DNA of 63,859 nucleotides, the filler included, from Octopus bimaculoides (taxonomy: Eukaryota): assembly GCF_001194135.2 (NCBI RefSeq). It is 10 parts of 9 records of this genome, joined end to end, with 100 filler letters (N's around TTAATTAATTAA, not from the genome) between each part and the next. Parts side by side here need not be neighbours in the genome. Positions count along the whole stretch, not along the records: positions 50,433 to 57,893 come from NC_069006.1; 9 more parts are not named here. One strand, 5' to 3'. The number at the start of each line of letters is the position of its first letter. The first letter of the stretch is position 1. Below the pieces are notes generated by a model that saw nothing but the letters and a program-made list of their open reading frames with translations, did not search any database and had not been told where the DNA came from. Of the stretch, positions 50,332 through 58,484 are shown piece by piece. Made by a program: the position numbers and the translations under genes.

Positions 50332-50534
50332 ANNNNNNNNNNNNNNNNNNNNNNNNNNNNNNNNNNNNNNNNNNNNTTAATTAATTAANNNNNNNNNNNN
50401 NNNNNNNNNNNNNNNNNNNNNNNNNNNNNNNNAAAACTGATGCTTCTAATGTTCAGCTTTTCTCTCAAGATACTTACACTCTGACGGGTATTCACATTGA
50501 CATTACACATCCAACGGAGCATACACATATATAT

Positions 50535-50722
50535 ATATATATATATATACATATATACGACGGGCCTCTTCCAGTTTCCGTCTACCAAATCCACTCACAA
50601 GGCTTTGGTCAGCCCGAGGCTATAGTAGAAGACACTTGCCCAAGGTGCCACGCAGTGGGACTGAACCCGGAACCAATGTGGTTGGTAAGCAAGCTACTTA
50701 CCACACAGCCACTCCTGCGCCT
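50535..50722 (-). mobile_element. SINE family A head, young copy
   Basis: Close to 9781-9946. Confidence 0.88.
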
Positions 50723-51394
50723 AAAGAAATATGGAACGCTTTAACTTTTAAAATTTGCTGTGTCTGTCATTCTGTGTGTGTGTGTGTGTGTGTGTTAGTC
50801 TATGTTGGTCTTCATTAGGTCCAGGTGTATATCTTTGCGGGGTGAGTCAATGTATTTGTCTCTGAGTCAAATCTCTGAATCCGTTTGTCTATATTTGTCT
50901 ATATGATGATGATGATGATGATGAATGTGAGGGGAAGGAGGAGGAGGATGAAGATGATGGCAGCAATGGTGAGGATAATGATGATAATTGTCGATGATGA
51001 CAACGATGACGACGACGACGATGACGATGACAATGTTTAAACGCATGAATGTGTTGTGTGTCTGTCTTTGTATCTGTGGTTCTCTGTGTCTCTGCATCTA
51101 TGTGCACATCTGTGTGTGTGTGTGTGTTTGTGTACGCATGTTGATTTATATGTGTGTGTGTGTGTGTGTGTGTATATGATCCCATGGTTGTGTCTGTGGG
51201 TTTAAAGTGTGTATTCGTTTAAATATCATCTTGACTTTAAACTTCTGAAATTCAAATACTTCTAAAAAATTATTTGTTTTGCTGTGAGTGGAAGGGGGTG
51301 GGGTGCTGGGGTGGATGGTGGCAGGGGTGGTGTTGGCAGGGGTGAATTTGTTTGTTTGTTTATTTTTTTCTGTTTATTTTTTGACTTCGTTGAT

Positions 51395-51905
51395 TTCAGT
51401 CTGTTATCATCATCATCGTTATCCTCCTCTTCCTCCTCCTCAAAATCCTTATCGTAATCATCATCATTGTTATCAACATCATCATCATTGTGATTGTCAT
51501 TATCTTCCTCATCCTCAACCTCATCATCATTGTTGTCGTTGTCACCATCATGGTCTTCCTCCACCTCCTCCTCTTCCACCTCCTCCCCTTCCACCTCCTC
51601 CCCTTCCACCTCCTCCTCTTCCACCACCTCCTCTTCCACCTCCTCCTCCTCCTCTTCATCATCATCATCATCACCTCCACTACCATCACAATCATTGTCG
51701 TCGTTATTGTCCTCCTCCTCTTCTTCACCACCATCTCCTCCTCCTCCACCACCACCATTATCATCAAGGTTGTCATCACCCTCCTCCTCATCGCTACCAC
51801 TTCCACTACCATCACCATCATTATCATCATCATCATCATCATCATGGTCATCATTGTTGTCCCCCTTCTCATCATCACCACCACCACCACCACCACCACC
51901 ATCAT
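51395..51905. repeat. compound (CAT/CCT/CAC)n low-complexity tract
   Basis: Directly visible; source of the poly-H/P/S/I ORFs. Confidence 0.95.
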
Positions 51906-52004
51906 TCTCTCTTCAGTTCCATCTGTTGATTGTTTCATTTCAATTGACATATTCTGAAATCCTCCTCCACTGCACAAAAGTTCATTGTTCAATGACCTTT
52001 TAAT

Positions 52005-52270
52005 CTAACCATCCAAACCAGCCAACCAGACAAACCAACCAGCCAACCAGCCAGCCAGCGAGCCAGTCAGCCGACCAGTCAACCAGCCACTTCTTCAGCT
52101 ATTCCATTGGACCATGTAGCAAGTCAGCCACCCAACCAGCTGGCTAACCAACAAACTGGCCAACCAACCAGACAACTATCCATCCAAAACTTCAGCCATC
52201 CATCAAACCAGTTTTCAATCCATTAATCTGATCCATCCAGCCAGCCATCCCCAGATACCCTCAGATACCC
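52005..52270. repeat. degenerate (CCAG/CCAA/CCAT)n tetranucleotide tract
   Basis: Directly visible. Confidence 0.8.
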
Positions 52271-52472
52271 ATCCACCTATTCATCTATTTCGCTATGTTC
52301 TCTAACAGATCAATCATCTCGCTCTTATAGCTGTTCATAAATACGCTAAGGCTTTCTCTACTACTACTACTACTACTACTGCTACTACACATATATATGT
52401 ATATGTTGGTATTATATATTCTTTTATTCTTTTACTTGTTTCAGTCATTTGACTGTGGCCATGCTGGAGTAC

Positions 52473-52515
52473 TCCAGACTGAGGAAGAGCAATGCCTCTG
52501 AAACTAGTCTCTGGA
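52473..52515 (+). ncRNA. minimal type I hammerhead ribozyme
   Basis: UCCAGA-CUGAGGA-AGAG(CAAUGC)CUCU-GAAA-CUAG-UC-UCUGGA: 6-bp stem I, intact core, 4-bp stem II, palindromic ACUAGU stem III and a GUC cleavage triplet (cut after 52509). Confidence 0.8.
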
Positions 52516-52754
52516 TGCTGGTTTTGCTGGGTGGAGGTGCTTATCTCCCCTGTTTGAAAACATAAGGACACAGTACACTTGTGTCACATAGCCAACTGGA
52601 AACAATGTTTCCTGGGGCTAAATAGCAGTAACATTCTTCCCTTTCATGGGACTGCCACATTAAGTTGGCAATAAACCATCACTTTATCGTGCTGCTACTG
52701 TATAAATCTCTCTGAGAGATTTAGAAATGTAATATTTCTAATTTTATATATATG

Positions 52755-53034
52755 GGACTGGCTCCTGTGCTGGTGGCACGTAAAAAACATCATTTTGAGC
52801 GTGGCTGTTGCCATTGCCGCCTGACTGGCCCTCATGCCTGTGGCACGTTTAAGCACCCACTACACACTCGGAGTGGTTGGCGTTAGGAAGGGCATCCAGC
52901 TGTAGAAACCCTGCCAGATCAGATTGGAGCCTTGTGCAGCCTTCTGGTTTACCAGTCTTCAGTCAAATCGTCCAACCCATGCTAGCATGGAAAGCGGACG
53001 TTAAACGATGATGATGATGATGATGATGATGATG
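52755..53034 (+). mobile_element. RTE LINE 3'UTR with (GAT)n tail
   Basis: Reverse-orientation homologue of 30672-30900. Confidence 0.85.
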
Positions 53035-53589
53035 ATATATATATATATGTATATATATATATGTACGATTGTGAGGTTGTGAGTTCGATTCCCAGACCGG
53101 GCCGAGTATCGTGACTGCATATGGGTGACTGATGGTCTTCCACAAACAAATTAGCCCAGTTTGGCTTCTTGTTTTAGGAAAATAGATAAAAGTTGGGTGT
53201 GAGTCTACAAAAAGAGCCAAACAAATAATGAACATTTATATACATATATATATATATTTTATTAAAAAATAAAACAATCTGTATAAGTTGTTGTTCTTGT
53301 TGTTGCTGTAATTGCTGCTGCAGTTGGTGCTGCTGCAGTTGGTGCTGCTGCAGTTGTTGCTTTATTCTTGTACTCAGTGTTGTTACTATTTCTGTTGTTG
53401 CTGCTGCTGCTGGTGTTGTTGTTGTTATAGTTATAGTTTTTTGCTATTGTTTGTTTGTTTGTTTGTTGATGCTTTTTTTAGCAGCTTCTGTTGTCATGGT
53501 TACATTTACATCCAATCAAGAAATTAAAACATATTTTTTTAAAATCTAAAATTTAAAATATTTATTTCACTTCTGTGACAGAAAGAGAG

Positions 53590-53845
53590 AGACGACGACG
53601 ATGATGATGATGGTGATGAGGTAGATGTCGGGGGCGGGGGATGATGATGATGATGATGATAACACTGATGAAGAAGGTAACATTGATGATGATGATGATC
53701 ATGGTGATGATGATAACGATGATGACAATGATGACAAAAATGATGATAACAATGATGATGATGATGATGACGACAACAATGACAATGATGATAATGATGG
53801 TGATGATGAAGATGCTGATGATGATGTTGGTGATGATGATGATGT
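53590..53845. repeat. (GAT)n degenerate microsatellite
   Basis: Directly visible. Confidence 0.92.
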
Positions 53846-54500
53846 TTACTGACATACTCCACAAAACCACAATAATTTCAGGAAAAAAACTCCCCCCCAA
53901 AAAACACTTCAAAAGCATGAGTAAAATATTTAAAAGTTTTTTTTTCTTTTAATATTGTAAAGAAAAAAGAATGTAAAAAGGAANNNNNNNNNNNNNNNNN
54001 NNNNNNNNNNNNNNNNNNNNNNNNNNNNNNNNNNNNNNNNNNNNNNNNNNNNNNNNNNNNNNNNNNNNNNNNNNNNNNNNNNNNNNNNNNNNNNNNNNNN
54101 NNNNNNNNNNNNNNNNNNNNNNNNNNNNNNNNNNNNNNNNNNNNNNNNNNNNNNNNNNNNNNNNNNNNNNNNNNNNNNNNNNNNNNNNNNNNNNNNNNNN
54201 NNNNNNNNNNNNNNNNNNNNNNNNNNNNNNNNNNNNNNNNNNNNNNNNNNNNNNNNNNNNNNNNNNNNNNNNNNNNNNNNNNNNNNNNNNNNNNNNNNNN
54301 NNNNNNNNNNNNNNNNNNNNNNNNNNNNNNNNNNNNNNNNNNNNNNNNNNNNNCTACGTGTGTTTGTGTTTTATGTATGTGTATAGTTATAAATATAAGT
54401 ATACACACATGCATGTATGTACATATATTCAATATATAAATATATATACATATATAAGTAGATATATATATATATATATACTTATATATATATATATATA

Positions 54501-54550
<50 letters not shown>

Positions 54551-54586
54551 TATATATATACACTTATATACATATATATATATGCG

Positions 54587-54629
<43 letters not shown>

Positions 54630-55805
54630 GTCAGGTCATTTGTGAGGTTACCCATGAGTACTACTGGTAGCATGGAGTCCAGTACAAGTTATTGCATGGT
54701 TGGGTCAGTGGAGACTAAACCAGCACCACCACAAGGCCTGCCTGGTGCGAAGGGTTGCTAAAAATATTGTCTATACATATATATATTTATATATGTCTAT
54801 ATGTACACATATTTCCCTTTTCCCCACCAAAATAGAGCATAAAAATATTAAAATATTTCAGTACACTATAATATGTTTTCTTGTATAAAAGATATATTGT
54901 GTTGCTGTTTAGAAAAGAAAAGAAACAGTCCTCATTGGGTAAATATATATTACTTTGAAGAGTTTGGTAAAAGTGAGAGGAGCGCTAGGGTGAGCTTCAG
55001 GTTTTTACGGATGAATAAGTTCATTTAACACACTCAAATGCATGCAGTTACATGTACAACTGCTACTGGTATGTTTAGAACTCCATGTAAATTATTCTTA
55101 TTTGATCTGTATAACATGAATCAATAAAGTGTACCTCTGATGATCTGTTGTGGTCTAACATCCAATTGCTCTTGGAACATGAAATACACAAGTTCCAAAC
55201 TACCACAATGTTGAAACATATGTAGGGAACATATTATATATAAACTGCATCTTGTGTTTATCATAATTTCTCCTCTATGTAACTATATACTTACACACAC
55301 ACATATATGCACACACACTCACACATACATATTACACATATATCTATGTATGTATATGTATGATTGATATTATTACTATATACTGTAGCTCAATGCAATG
55401 TAAGTCTGTATTATTATAATTCTCAGTCTGAAAAATTACTAATAGGAGATGTTTTACATGTTTTTCTGCAGGTATATCTATATAACTCCTATTAGTAACA
55501 AAACATATGTAATGCAGAATAAATAATGCCAAGAAGTTTTTGCAGTTTTCTCTTTTAACATGTAATTACTCTGCAATAATTATTTTCCCGTATTTAACAA
55601 TATAACCGCATCCTCCAGTATTTTCAACTCTCATATAAAATATAACATCTACAAATATAATTTGGAGTACTGGAATACACGGATGTACTTTATGAGGACA
55701 CAACTGGGATTATAACCCTATCTACATACTAAGTATGTTTTTTTATATATGTATGTATGTATGTGTATGTATACAGACATGAAAAGAAATACTGAGGGGT
55801 AAAAC

Positions 55806-56257
55806 TTAATCCGTTCTTTGACACATATAACAGATAATCAAAATTATGACTGTTAGTACAGCCACTGCCAGCAAGATATACACAATCATAATATGAACTA
55901 TGCAATAGATAAAGACAGATCGATTGCACCAGTCTATTGGTTTGTGGAGGCTTCCGTAGGGGTTAGGCCACCAAATTCCAAATACCCATACGTTACCTAG
56001 CACAAACCAGACAATTAGGAATAAAGTGAGGAAGTTGCTGGTGAACTTCAGCATTTTGGTTACAACAAGTGATTCGTCGTCATCATCGTCATCGTAGTCA
56101 TTGTGGTGGGTGTTGTAGCTTTCGTACTTCTGGCTACGTCGAAACGAGACTTGGCGCCAAAGGGACAGGATCATCTTCAGGGTCCCTGTACTCCCTGTCA
56201 CTAACAGATAGACAAGAATGCGGGGTTCTTTGGGACATTCCTCTTGGAAACTGGAAC
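55806..56257 (-). CDS. TMEM272: TMEM272-like transmembrane protein, terminal coding exon
   Basis: CAG acceptor at 56260-56258, phase 1. Translation G-SSFQEECPKEPRILVYLLVTGSTGTLKM...YDDDDDDE...LFLIVWFVLGNVWVFG..P...DWCNRSVFIY...CQRTD* matches the TMEM272 pattern (CP..P...YLLV.G..GTLK, acidic run, WF.LGN.WVF, C.K/R). Confidence 0.9.
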
Positions 56258-56363
56258 CTGTGGTGAGAAGGAAATATGATTTATTATTTTACAATATATG
56301 TATGTATATATATATATATATATACACATACATACTTTATTTAAAAGCAGCAGAAATATAACA

Positions 56364-56397
<34 letters not shown>

Positions 56398-57427
56398 CAA
56401 TTACATAAATGGCAAATTCTGTCTGTCTGATCTGTCTATCTGTTACCATCTTGCTGTCTGCACCAGTGAACCAACCTTGACGAAAGTTTGCGTACATGTT
56501 AAACTAACATCCAGTTGAATTATAGGCTAAGTGGATTTCATTAAAAACCTATAATGGCCCTCTAGGCGGGGTGCTGTAGTATGTTTACCAATCAATAACA
56601 CATCTACAGATATGAATTAAGTAAGGCTTTTGTAAGAGCTCAACCATGCATTCCTTCATGTAAATTTTCATGAGAGCAATTCAGCTTTCTAAAAGGAAAA
56701 CAATTCTGCATGTAGTGCCTTTACATCACGCTAAGGTCACATTAAGGACATGGTCAGCTGCAGGACTTGTGGATAGGATATGGAACAATTTAATGACCAG
56801 TGACCTGGAAGTTGGTTCACCATGAGATTAATTTGATGAGTGAAATCCAAATTACCGTAACATCTTAATTACTTTTATCATGCAACATGAGACATGACCA
56901 CACTAAGATAAGCTATGACATGTGGCAATGTCAGCTACAATACGCGGACTATTTGTCAATGTATTTGTAAATCTATCTATTTATCTAATTTATTTTATTC
57001 AGATGTATATTCGTTTGTTAAAATAATATAGGGACAGTCATTATTCATCCACTAAATGAATTAGTATTTGGTGTGTATATTCCCCACCAGGACAGGACAG
57101 GGCATTAGTTTATCACAGAATAACTTATTTTTGCCAGCTGAGTGGACTGGCGCAACATGAAATGAAGTGTTTTGCTCAAGAACACAACACATCACCCGGT
57201 CCTGGAATTGAAACCGCAATCTTACGATCACAAGTCTAACACCCTAACCACTAAGCCATGTGCCTCCACATACTCAAATATTGCAGTAGCGTATTAGAAT
57301 AAATGCTGGACTAGAATAAATTCTGGTGAGGTTGATACAATCAACTGAAATCGGTTCAATCCCAAAAATGAAACCAGTAAAGAGTAAAAGAGGAATAGAA
57401 TAGTAGAATAATGTATTTTGTACTCAC

Positions 57428-57487
57428 CGACAAATATCATAGATAAGGGTAACAGAAGGACTATGACCAATGTAACTGTGAATATAT
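57428..57487 (-). CDS. TMEM272: TMEM272-like, preceding 60-nt coding exon
   Basis: TTCCAG acceptor and G|GTGAGT donor, phase 1/1. Encodes IFTVTLVIVLLLPLSMIFV-G (cf. LALPLSMTFIG) in frame with the terminal exon. Confidence 0.88.
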
Positions 57488-58484
57488 CTGGAAGGAACAT
57501 ATAAATGAGCATGAAAATATAAAGATACACTAAGTCATGAATATCAATTGTTTTCTGTCATATCTGTGTGTGTGTGTGTGTGTGTGTGTGTATAAATATA
57601 TTGAAAAAAAGAAAAAAAATGGAACAAGAACATAACAGGTGACAGCAAAACATCTGGAAAGTATGTGCAACCGAAACCCCTAGGGGCATCCTGAAGGACG
57701 ACCCAGATAGATAGATATTATACTGTTTTTTATCTTTGTGGGTGGATACTACTACATTTTAACATGACACCCAAACAGGTTAAATCAAAAAAAAAAAAAA
57801 AACTGCTCAAGGCATGTCTATTAAAATCTTAGATTAAATATTATTTACTTAATGTATCAAATGTCATCATTCTGCTTCCAAGAAATTACTAAANNNNNNN
57901 NNNNNNNNNNNNNNNNNNNNNNNNNNNNNNNNNNNNNTTAATTAATTAANNNNNNNNNNNNNNNNNNNNNNNNNNNNNNNNNNNNNNNNNNNNTGTCAGG
58001 CTCATGAGGGTCGGTTTCCAGGTTTCAATGGCGTATATATTCCTCGCCAGGGTTACTCATTTTTGCCAGATAAGTAGATGGAAGCAACGTAATTGAAGCG
58101 TTTTGTTGAAGAATACATGTCGCCCGGTCCAGGTATCGAAATTGCAATCTTACTATGAGTCTAACGCCCTAATCACTAATGTACACTTCTATATACATAA
58201 TAGGTTGTCCATTTCTGTGATCTTCTTCCTAGAGGTAAGACAAAAATTTTCTCATGCTCTCAGCCCGAACATATCTTTTCCTCTATACATTCAGTAAAGC
58301 ATTACCTAGTGTCGAATGCTTATCGACTGCTATTTCCAGCAAAAATTGGTACCTTGTTGCGCCACTATTTTCTGATTATAATTCTACTTTTACGGTGCTT
58401 TATTTCGTTGGAAAATAACACTATTCTATGGAAAATAATTCTACTGTATTGTAATAATATTTATAACTTATATATATATTTATA

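What the first reader, a model, noticed from the sequence alone, without database searches (positions are those of the whole stretch)
52473..52515. Structurally intact minimal type I hammerhead ribozyme hidden between SINE and RTE debris
Seen: every conserved hammerhead element is in order on the plus strand. Stem I is UCCAGA (52473-78) with UCUGGA (52510-15); the core CUGAGGA is 52479-85; stem II is AGAG/CUCU; GAAA is 52500-03; stem III is the palindrome ACUAGU; cleavage follows GUC at 52509. Established: minimal type I hammerheads with a very short palindromic stem III are characteristic of Penelope-like elements and retrozymes and are thought to cleave as dimers. Inference: this is a possibly still active self-cleaving RNA from a cephalopod PLE or non-autonomous retrozyme-like family. 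I cannot tell whether this family has been described. It lies ~3.3 kb downstream of the TMEM272-like stop codon but on the opposite strand.
Basis: partly seen in the sequence, partly recalled or inferred. Interest (0 to 1): 0.85.

Follow-up and report, generated by a model that had tools for sequence, protein, structure and literature searches.

The report
Lone hammerhead ribozyme relic, octopus-like DNA
A complete 43-base hammerhead self-cleaving RNA motif really is present, but it looks like a single, cut-off leftover of a known kind of ribozyme-carrying mobile element, and it is unlikely to cleave well where it sits.

Summary
Positions 52473-52515 (+) read UCCAGA|CUGAGGA|AGAG-CAAUGC-CUCU|GAA|ACUAGU|C^|UCUGGA, a type I hammerhead with every invariant core base.

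Such a motif is not expected by chance in this piece (about 1.5e-4 for stems of 6 and 4 bp). Tens could arise by chance in a whole ~2.8 Gb genome.

The stronger evidence is a metagenome scan that fixed only helix I (5' strand), the core and helix III. It returned six marine eukaryotic loci. All carry the unspecified complementary UCUGG, a sixth covarying helix I pair and different compensating helix II sequences. One locus is a 727-bp head-to-tail repeat. Prokaryotic and viral collections gave no match.

The window copy is therefore most likely a descendant of a real hammerhead lineage, of the canonical metazoan "6/4/1 bp plus palindromic tetraloop" kind that cleaves as dimers (retrozymes and Penelope-like elements).

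It is also solitary. No partner, tandem unit or Penelope-like ORF lies within 7.4 kb. Its 5' flank is read (from memory) as an unrelated SINE end, so any distal helix I is missing. It has A10.1-U11.1 instead of G-C, and its predicted fold in context disfavours the ribozyme. Rfam does not detect it. Present activity is unlikely and untested. It is a new member of a known kind, of low to moderate interest.

The parts
52473..52478 (+). Helix I, 5' strand (UCCAGA; positions 2.6-2.1)
   Evidence: It pairs with 52510-52515. CCAGA is identical in six metagenome hammerheads. The outermost pair covaries across them: U-A, A-U, G-U.
52479..52485 (+). Core box 1: C3 U4 G5 A6 G7 G8 A9
   Evidence: All invariant bases are present. 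N7 is G here and C or U in the relatives.
52486..52499 (+). Helix II (AGAG/CUCU, 4 bp) with 6-nt loop CAAUGC; the 10.1-11.1 pair is A-U
   Evidence: All four helix II pairs show changes on both sides across the family. The relatives all have G10.1-C11.1.
52500..52502 (+). Core box 2: G12 A13 A14
52503..52508 (+). Helix III, palindrome ACUAGU. As a monomer this is A15.1-U16.1 closing the tetraloop CUAG. Between two copies it can form a 6-bp helix.
   Evidence: The ACUAGU self-duplex is -4.8 kcal/mol. The sequence is identical in all metagenome relatives, but it was part of the search pattern.
52509..52510 (+). Predicted cleavage site: after C17 (52509), before U1.1 (52510)
   Evidence: Inferred from the position in the motif and hammerhead numbering. 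Not tested experimentally.
52510..52515 (+). Helix I, 3' strand (UCUGGA; positions 1.1-1.6)
   Evidence: UCUGG was not specified in the metagenome pattern, yet it is present in all six loci.
52420..52472 (.). Unrelated 5' flank. I read it as the terminal ~50 nt of an octopus-type SINE in reverse orientation, preceded by a TA-rich tail. It replaces whatever distal helix I the element once had.
   Evidence: Sequence. The SINE identity comes from my memory of octopus repeats. The other half of the same SINE type is at 50556-50722. Only one copy of this 30-mer exists in the window.
52464..52477 (+). Palindrome CUGGAG-UA-CUCCAG spanning the junction. It competes with helix I for the 5' strand.
   Evidence: Sequence. 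It forms in the MFE folds of the 71-nt and 181-nt contexts.
52516..52754 (+). About 240 bp of unclassified sequence 3' of the ribozyme, probably the rest of the same element. With the ribozyme it makes a 283-nt unit.
   Evidence: No match to the metagenome loci or elsewhere in the piece. The 283-nt stretch folds with z = -2.81; 1 of 200 shuffles folds as well.
52755..53036 (+). A second SINE-like repeat ending in (GAT)10, which bounds the fragment on the 3' side
   Evidence: Sequence. (GAT)10 at 53007-53036. The SINE identity is from memory.

Best explanation
The 43 nt are a genuine hammerhead-lineage sequence. I read it as a solitary, 5'-truncated remnant (about 283 bp, 52473-52755) of a hammerhead-bearing retroelement. 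The parent would be either a PLE-dependent non-LTR retrozyme unit or the 3'/pLTR end of a Penelope-like element, now sitting between two SINE-like repeats.

In the parent element the ribozyme would act on multimeric or tandem transcripts. Two copies pair through the palindromic ACUAGU to build a stable shared helix III (a 'double hammerhead'). Each active site then cuts after GUC, releasing unit-length RNA with 5'-OH and 2',3'-cyclic phosphate ends. That RNA can be circularised and reverse-transcribed by a PLE reverse transcriptase.

At this locus the copy is probably inert. It has no partner copy, no distal helix I or loop 1, a weak A/U-containing helix II with A10.1-U11.1, and flanks that favour other folds.

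Shown here: the motif, its local non-randomness, the existence of natural relatives with compensating helices in repeated elements, and solitariness within 7.4 kb. Inferred: retroelement origin, the dimer mechanism (taken from the literature on this architecture), and present inactivity.
For: - The motif is complete and is the only descriptor hit in the piece. Expected by chance: 1.5e-4 per piece at this stem quality.
- A metagenome scan with CCAGA-CUGANGA-N12-16-GAAACUAGUC gave six loci. All have the unspecified UCUGG, a sixth helix I pair and a proper helix II of differing sequence.
- The same pattern gave 0 matches in 596 Gb of prokaryotic genomes. A wider-gap version (N10-22) gave 0 in viral contigs.
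- On the model-fitted alignment, 97.2% of cells are paired, against 20-42% when partners are slid. Five pairs change on both sides, and 0 of 500 shuffles reach the covariation score.
- The relatives lie in repeats: a 727-bp head-to-tail repeat in L003; L002, L003 and L005 are 68-84% identical over hundreds of bp; L001 and L004 share 428 bp at 96.7%.
- The architecture (helix I 6 bp, helix II 4 bp, helix III of one pair plus a palindromic tetraloop) is what PMC4209133 calls the canonical metazoan type I HHR. PMC7229834 describes it for amphibian retrozyme HHRs that cleave poorly as monomers and well as dimers.
- PLEs are present in Octopus vulgaris, including families listed as recently active (PMC13282606). 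Retrozymes are argued to be PLE derivatives (bioRxiv 10.64898/2026.07.22.740005).
- Solitariness: no second copy by repeat search, BLASTN or family covariance model.
- Weak fold in context: P(helix I) is 0.01-0.12 and P(helix II) 0.07-0.12 with 35-70 nt flanks. The relatives give 0.27-0.89 for helix I, and about 1.0 for helix II in the four loci where the register could be scored.
Against: - No homologous copy from the source genome could be examined, because no cephalopod DNA is reachable with these tools. Family membership, copy number and covariation within the host are therefore untested.
- The flanks show no similarity to the metagenome elements.
- No RT or GIY-YIG ORF and no tandem unit are present in the piece.
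- Rfam's hammerhead models do not report the motif even at E<=10 in a 111-nt search. This is weak evidence, since a clear relative reaches only 20.5 bits against a gathering score of 34.
- The family-model score of 38.4 bits is partly circular, because the relatives were retrieved with a pattern taken from the window.
- Thermodynamic predictions do not measure co-transcriptional ribozyme activity.
Confidence: 0.7

Rival explanations
1. The motif is a chance occurrence. A CUGANGA...GAAA...UC arrangement with fortuitous complementary flanks in AT-rich repetitive DNA, with no hammerhead ancestry.
For: - The stem-less core pattern is expected 0.67 times per window.
- Markov simulation gives 2 hits per 98 Mb with stems >=6 and >=4 bp, so tens are possible in a ~2.8 Gb genome if the whole genome was screened.
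- Rfam gives no hit.
- The MFE z-score of the 43-mer is only -0.54.
- The 10.1-11.1 pair is not G-C.
Against: - Its helix I 5' strand and helix III are base-for-base those of natural hammerheads. A 21-base pattern taken from it retrieved six loci that all complete the ribozyme with unspecified bases. It retrieved none in 596 Gb of prokaryotic DNA.
- A random motif would have to match a natural helix I plus helix III combination by luck, roughly 4^-9 per natural family.
- The architecture (6/4/1 bp plus palindromic tetraloop) is the canonical metazoan one (PMC4209133).
Confidence: 0.07
2. The motif is a currently functional ribozyme. It would be either a member of an active cephalopod retrozyme or PLE family whose transcripts dimerise in trans, or a domesticated hammerhead acting on a host transcript near the neighbouring gene.
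For: - All invariant core bases, the A15.1-U16.1 pair and the GUC site are intact.
- G-C to A-U at 10.1-11.1 is a change on both sides that keeps the pair. It would need two independent transitions, hinting at selection at the RNA level.
- The 283-nt unit is more structured than shuffles, z = -2.81.
- Octopus vulgaris has recently active PLE families (PMC13282606).
Against: - It is a single copy with no partner within 7.4 kb.
- The distal helix I seen in the relatives is replaced by an unrelated flank.
- The ribozyme fold is a minor predicted species in context.
- PLE-type and amphibian-type hammerheads with this helix III show little or no monomer activity in vitro (PMC4209133, PMC7229834).
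- It lies about 3.3 kb from the nearest exon-like ORF and on the other strand. No expression data are available.
Confidence: 0.1
3. The motif is specifically the pLTR/3' end of an autonomous Penelope-like element, severely 5'-truncated on insertion, rather than a non-autonomous retrozyme unit.
For: - PLE hammerheads lie in pLTRs near the 3' end, and most genomic motifs are single and attributed to truncated PLEs (PMC4209133, PMC8557442).
- The hammerhead sits at the extreme 5' edge of the fragment.
- TA-rich microsatellite lies on both sides, and PMC8557442 notes that PLEs favour microsatellite targets.
Against: - The architecture is not the PLE min-HHR described in PMC4209133 (long helix II, short helix I, bulge after A9, no helix III). 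It is the canonical type found in retrozymes (PMC7229834).
- The 283-nt fragment size falls within the 170-400 nt retrozyme range.
- No RT or endonuclease remnant is present in the piece.
Confidence: 0.25

Closest known systems
Canonical metazoan type I hammerheads of non-LTR retrozymes and satellite repeats (newt satellite 2, axolotl HHR_Amex1, Schistosoma Sm-alpha; PMC7229834, PMC4209133)
   Same: - Type I topology.
- Helix I of 6 bp and helix II of 4 bp.
- Helix III of a single A-U pair closing a palindromic tetraloop, which implies double-hammerhead (dimer) cleavage.
- GUC cleavage site.
- Fragment size (283 nt) within the retrozyme unit range.
   Different: - Solitary rather than tandem.
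- A10.1-U11.1 instead of G-C.
- No recognisable loop 1 or distal helix I for the loop-loop tertiary contact.
- No evidence of expression or circular RNA.
min-HHRs in pLTRs of Penelope-like elements (Cervera and de la Pena 2014, PMC4209133)
   Same: - Type I, with palindromic 15.2-16.2.
- Mostly found as single, dispersed motifs thought to be truncated elements.
- Low monomer activity.
- The host group has PLEs (PMC13282606).
   Different: - min-HHRs have helix II of 7-8 bp, helix I of 4-5 bp, an unpaired base after A9, G10.1-C11.1 and usually no helix III. The window motif has none of these.
- No PLE ORF is nearby.
Uncharacterised marine-eukaryote hammerhead repeats found here (L001-L006)
   Same: - Identical CCAGA/UCUGG helix I, a sixth helix I pair, identical ACUAGU helix III and the same GUC site.
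- 4-6 bp helix II.
   Different: - They have G10.1-C11.1, C or U at position 7, GC-rich helix II and a second distal helix I segment (AUUAC/GUAAU or CUCUG/UAGAG).
- Their ribozyme folds are stable in context.
- Their flanks are unrelated to the window.
Rfam Hammerhead_1 (RF00163)
   Same: Same secondary-structure layout. The relative L003 aligns end to end with the model.
   Different: The window motif does not reach E<=10. L003 scores 20.5 bits against a gathering score of 34.

Membership tests
Hammerhead ribozyme, type I | Invariant core: C3 U4 G5 A6 N7 G8 A9, G12 A13 A14, A15.1-U16.1, H17 | tested here: met
   sequence. Descriptor hits.
Hammerhead ribozyme, type I | Three helices around the core, with helix I open (5' and 3' ends in helix I) | tested here: met
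   Helix I is 6 bp, helix II 4 bp, and helix III one to two pairs plus a palindrome. The pairs are supported by covariation across relatives.
Hammerhead ribozyme, type I | G10.1-C11.1 base pair (highly conserved but not strictly invariant) | tested here: not met
   A-U in the window and G-C in all six relatives. Compensatory changes at this pair are reported in cricket satellite hammerheads (PMC2837043).
Hammerhead ribozyme, type I | Reaches the Rfam Hammerhead_1 gathering score (34 bits) | tested here: not met
   No hammerhead match at E<=10. A clear relative also fails, at 20.5 bits, so this test has low power for this subtype.
Hammerhead ribozyme, type I | Loop 1 / loop 2 tertiary contact (distal helix I) needed for fast cleavage at physiological Mg2+ | tested here: inconclusive
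   The relatives have a second helix I segment beyond an internal loop. In the window the 5' flank is unrelated sequence, and only a scattered -12.6 kcal/mol duplex with the 3' flank is predicted.
Hammerhead ribozyme, type I | Site-specific self-cleavage after position 17 | not testable with these tools
   This needs in vitro transcription of monomer and dimer constructs, or RNA end mapping.
Non-LTR retrozyme (metazoan) | Head-to-tail tandem repeats of about 170-400 bp, each with a type I hammerhead | tested here: not met
   A single copy in 7.4 kb. Monomeric insertions do exist in the family according to bioRxiv 10.64898/2026.07.22.740005.
Non-LTR retrozyme (metazoan) | Canonical 6/4 helices with a short palindromic helix III | tested here: met
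   compared with the descriptions in PMC4209133 and PMC7229834.
Non-LTR retrozyme (metazoan) | Many related genomic copies, and linear and circular RNA of unit length | not testable with these tools
   No cephalopod genome or transcriptome is in the collections (searches returned nothing).
Penelope-like element (pLTR hammerhead) | RT plus GIY-YIG ORF flanked by direct repeats that each carry the hammerhead | tested here: not met
   No long ORF, no YxDD-type motif and no second hammerhead in the piece. A truncated remnant cannot be excluded.
Penelope-like element (pLTR hammerhead) | min-HHR architecture (long helix II, short helix I, bulged base after A9, no helix III) | tested here: not met
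   The window has helix II of 4 bp, helix I of 6 bp, no bulge and a helix III palindrome.

The most novel reading that the evidence does not exclude
The copy could be one member of a still undescribed, possibly active cephalopod retrozyme or PLE family. Its hammerhead would carry an A10.1-U11.1 variant and share helix I and helix III base for base with elements of distant marine eukaryotes. That would point to an unusually conserved ribozyme lineage or to horizontal transfer, and such a family might be expressed as small circular RNAs in octopus tissues.
Probability: 0.15. Interest if true: 0.5.

Novelty: new member of a known kind. Interest (0 to 1): 0.3.

Why it matters
Hammerheads of this architecture are already known in very large numbers in animal genomes, as parts of retrozymes and Penelope-like elements. 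One more solitary copy changes little.

It has modest value in three ways:
- The open literature I searched has no description of hammerhead ribozymes in octopus, although octopus genomes carry Penelope-like elements (PMC13282606).
- It gives a concrete seed sequence for finding the family in cephalopod genomes.
- The exact sharing of helix I and helix III with elements of unidentified marine eukaryotes is a small curiosity.

It also shows that Rfam's hammerhead models miss this subtype.

Tried and rejected
- **Rfam.** cmscan over the piece and over 111 nt gave no hammerhead hit. The top 'microRNA' hits are TG/TA microsatellites. The positive control shows the models are weak for this subtype.
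- **Finding genomic copies through the protein database.** I translated both strands across the ribozyme and searched. No candidate was returned, not even for the flank I read as an abundant SINE. An exact-ORF look-up also found nothing. The collections evidently lack this genome's repeats.
- **Identifying the organism.** A search with the neighbouring exon-like ORF gave no homologue and no significant Pfam family.
- **Flank homology.** There is none between the window and the metagenome loci.
- **PLE ORFs next to the metagenome hammerheads.** Only RVT_1 ORFs more than 7 kb away in L004, and unrelated kinase and TSP1 ORFs.
- **Other scans of the piece.** A six-frame look for RT-like motifs found nothing. 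ARAGORN found no tRNA-like SINE heads.
- **Literature search for the ribozyme strings.** Only unrelated primers turned up. Supplements held nothing.
- **Alternative register.** A bulged A after A9 with G10.1 would leave an extra U before G12 and an A-C mismatch, so I rejected it.

Full report
**Observation.** The plus strand at 52473-52515 reads UCCAGA CUGAGGA AGAG CAAUGC CUCU GAA ACUAGU C UCUGGA. In hammerhead numbering this is:
- helix I, 5' strand: positions 2.6-2.1;
- core: C3 U4 G5 A6 G7 G8 A9;
- helix II: A10.1-U11.1, G-C, A-U, G-C, with a 6-nt loop;
- G12 A13 A14;
- helix III: A15.1...U16.1 enclosing CUAG;
- C17;
- helix I, 3' strand: positions 1.1-1.6.

My own descriptor finds this as the only hit on either strand of the 7,461-base piece. 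The descriptor requires the core, helix I >=4 bp, helix II >=3 bp, A15.1/U16.1 and H17.

**Is it more than chance?** The core boxes alone are not significant, at 0.67 expected per window. With the stems they are. In 98 Mb of first-order Markov sequence of the piece's composition (both strands), the relaxed descriptor hit 61 times. Two hits had helix I >=6 bp and helix II >=4 bp, and none also had helix III >=2 bp. That gives about 0.005 (relaxed) and 1.5e-4 (strict) expected in the piece. The same rates predict tens of chance motifs in a genome of about 2.8 Gb. Local statistics therefore cannot by themselves exclude a lucky find from a genome-wide screen.

**Related sequences.** No tool here reaches the source genome.
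- Translations across the motif on both strands found nothing in the protein collection. One of them included the flank I read as an abundant SINE.
- Exact ORF look-up failed.
- The neighbouring exon-like ORF has no homologue there.

I therefore scanned the metagenome collection once with CCAGACTGANGA-N12-16-GAAACTAGTC. This fixes helix I (5' strand), the core and helix III, but leaves helix II and the 3' strand of helix I free. Six loci matched, and all six complete the ribozyme with bases I had not specified:
- UCUGG directly after GUC;
- a sixth helix I pair (A-U or G-U, against U-A in the window);
- a proper helix II of different sequence (GGCC/GGCC, GACC/GGUC, GGUCG/CGACC), always with G10.1-C11.1, twice with the extra base after A9;
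- a second, distal helix I segment beyond an internal loop that also covaries (AUUAC/GUAAU against CUCUG/UAGAG).

The same pattern found nothing in 596 Gb of prokaryotic genomes. A version with a wider gap (N10-22) found nothing in viral contigs.

On the model-fitted alignment of the window plus the relatives, 97.2% of cells are paired, against 20-42% when partners are slid. All four helix II pairs and the outer helix I pair change on both sides. No shuffle out of 500 reaches the covariation score.

The relatives sit in repeats:
- L003 is a 727-bp head-to-tail repeat with one ribozyme per unit.
- L002, L003 and L005 are 68-84% identical over hundreds of bases.
- L001 and L004 share 428 bp at 96.7% around the ribozyme, within otherwise different eukaryotic contigs.

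So the window's particular helix I and helix III sequences are those of a natural hammerhead lineage. A random pseudo-motif would match them only by a roughly 4^-9 coincidence per natural family. I conclude that the motif descends from a real hammerhead. Apart from the ribozyme itself, the flanks of the window and of these loci are unrelated.

**Rfam.** No hammerhead family is reported for the window motif, either in the 7.4-kb search or in a 111-nt search at E<=10. As a control, the six loci gave nothing at E<=0.1. In a 121-nt search the L003 ribozyme reached only 20.5 bits on Hammerhead_1, whose gathering score is 34. The negative result is therefore weak evidence. It does show that the window copy scores lower than its relative by a margin I estimate at 10 bits or more, because of G7, the A-U at 10.1-11.1 and the AU-containing helix II. 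A model built from the relatives scores the window at 38.4 bits, against 62-70 bits for the relatives themselves. This is partly circular, because the relatives were fished with a pattern from the window.

**What kind of hammerhead.** Helix I of 6 bp, helix II of 4 bp, and a helix III that as a monomer can be no more than A15.1-U16.1 closing the palindromic tetraloop CUAG is the architecture Cervera and de la Pena call canonical for metazoan type I hammerheads (PMC4209133). The same architecture is described for amphibian retrozyme ribozymes. Those cleave poorly as single motifs and efficiently as dimers, because two copies pair through the palindrome to build a long shared helix III (PMC7229834).

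It is not the 'min-HHR' of PLE pLTRs as that paper defines it: helix II 7-8 bp, helix I 4-5 bp, a bulged base after A9, and no helix III. Retrozymes are now argued to be non-autonomous derivatives of PLEs (bioRxiv 10.64898/2026.07.22.740005). Octopus vulgaris carries PLEs, including families listed as recently active (PMC13282606). I found no open paper that describes hammerheads in octopus.

**State of this copy.**
- It is alone. No second copy or degenerate partner appears in 7.4 kb by repeat finding, tandem-repeat finding, BLASTN of the 283-bp fragment, or the family model with filters off. There is also no long ORF or RT-like motif.
- Sequence that I recognise, from memory and not from a tool, as the terminal ~50 nt of an octopus SINE in reverse orientation runs up to 52472. 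The other half of that SINE type is at 50556-50722. The ribozyme therefore begins exactly at a junction, and whatever distal helix I it once had is gone.
- The junction creates the palindrome CUGGAG-UA-CUCCAG (52464-52477). This competes for the helix I 5' strand. The 3' flank GCUGGUUU can also pair with GAAACUAGU.
- With 35-70 nt of flank, the predicted probability of helix I is 0.01-0.12 and of helix II 0.07-0.12. The relatives give 0.27-0.89 for helix I, and about 1.0 for helix II in the four loci scored in the correct register.
- On the 3' side, about 240 bp of unclassified sequence runs to a second SINE-like repeat at 52755-53036. The 283-nt fragment is within the retrozyme unit size range and is more structured than shuffles (z = -2.81). 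This is suggestive only.
- The piece is CpG-depleted (observed/expected 0.39), and C11.1-G12 would be a CpG. The U at 11.1 could therefore be ordinary decay. The matching A at 10.1 needs a second, non-CpG transition, which hints that the A-U pair was already present in a functional parent. Without sister copies this cannot be decided.

**Conclusion.** The most likely reading (about 0.7) is a solitary, truncated relic of a hammerhead-bearing PLE-type retroelement. A retrozyme unit is somewhat more likely than a pLTR end. Its ribozyme worked in the parent by double-hammerhead cleavage of multimeric transcripts. At this locus it is probably inactive. A pure chance motif (about 0.07) and a currently functional ribozyme (about 0.1) remain possible. 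This is a new member of a known kind. The decisive step is a search of the source genome for sister copies, followed by monomer-versus-dimer cleavage assays.

Noticed in passing
window 53984-54353: A run of 370 N (assembly gap) inside the piece. ORFs listed across it are artefacts.
   Followed up: yes
window 54356-54631, 55274-55401, 56294-56406: The best Rfam 'hits' of the piece (mir-297, mir-3149, mir-1277) fall on TA/TG/CA microsatellites and are far below gathering scores. They are false positives.
   Followed up: yes
window 50556-50722, 52420-52472, 52755-53036, about 53060-53110: Several SINE-like pieces, which I recognise from memory as octopus-type SINEs. One has a tRNA-like box (gagttcgattccc) and one ends in (GAT)10. 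ARAGORN calls no tRNA. No repeat library was available to confirm this.
   Followed up: partly
window 52007-52250: A degenerate (AACCAGCC)n / (CCAG)n microsatellite about 250-450 bp upstream of the ribozyme. It is complementary to the GCUGG motifs that follow the ribozyme, and to UCUGG-like helix I sequences. I cannot tell whether this is coincidence or a target or by-product of the element.
   Followed up: no
window 51288-51929 and 53640-53844: Long trinucleotide-type low-complexity tracts (ATC/CTC-rich, and GAT-rich). They are inverted relative to each other (70-76% complementary arms about 2 kb apart) and bracket the ribozyme region. The long 'ORFs' there are compositional artefacts.
   Followed up: partly
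It has no significant Pfam family and no homologue in the protein collection.
   Followed up: partly
window 52913-52948: Inside the SINE-like repeat, a hairpin GCCAGA-N24-UCUGGU with the same helix I sequence as the metagenome hammerheads but no core. It scores 11.5 bits, E 0.086, with the family model. Probably chance.
   Followed up: partly
L003 1-1284 (OBQE01000158.1); also L002, L005: A 727-bp head-to-tail repeat carrying one canonical type I hammerhead per unit, in a marine metagenome contig. Related repeats are 68-84% identical in two other marine contigs. It looks like a retrozyme-like or circular-RNA-derived element of an unidentified marine eukaryote.
   Followed up: partly
L001 2175-2602 and L004 1-428: Two 10-kb eukaryotic contigs from one metagenome share a 428-bp, 96.7% identical repeat containing the hammerhead. 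Elsewhere they encode a protein kinase, a TSP1-domain protein and RVT_1 reverse transcriptases more than 7 kb away.
   Followed up: partly
window 50433-57893: GC is 37% and CpG observed/expected is 0.39, which indicates methylation-driven CpG decay in this genome region.
   Followed up: no
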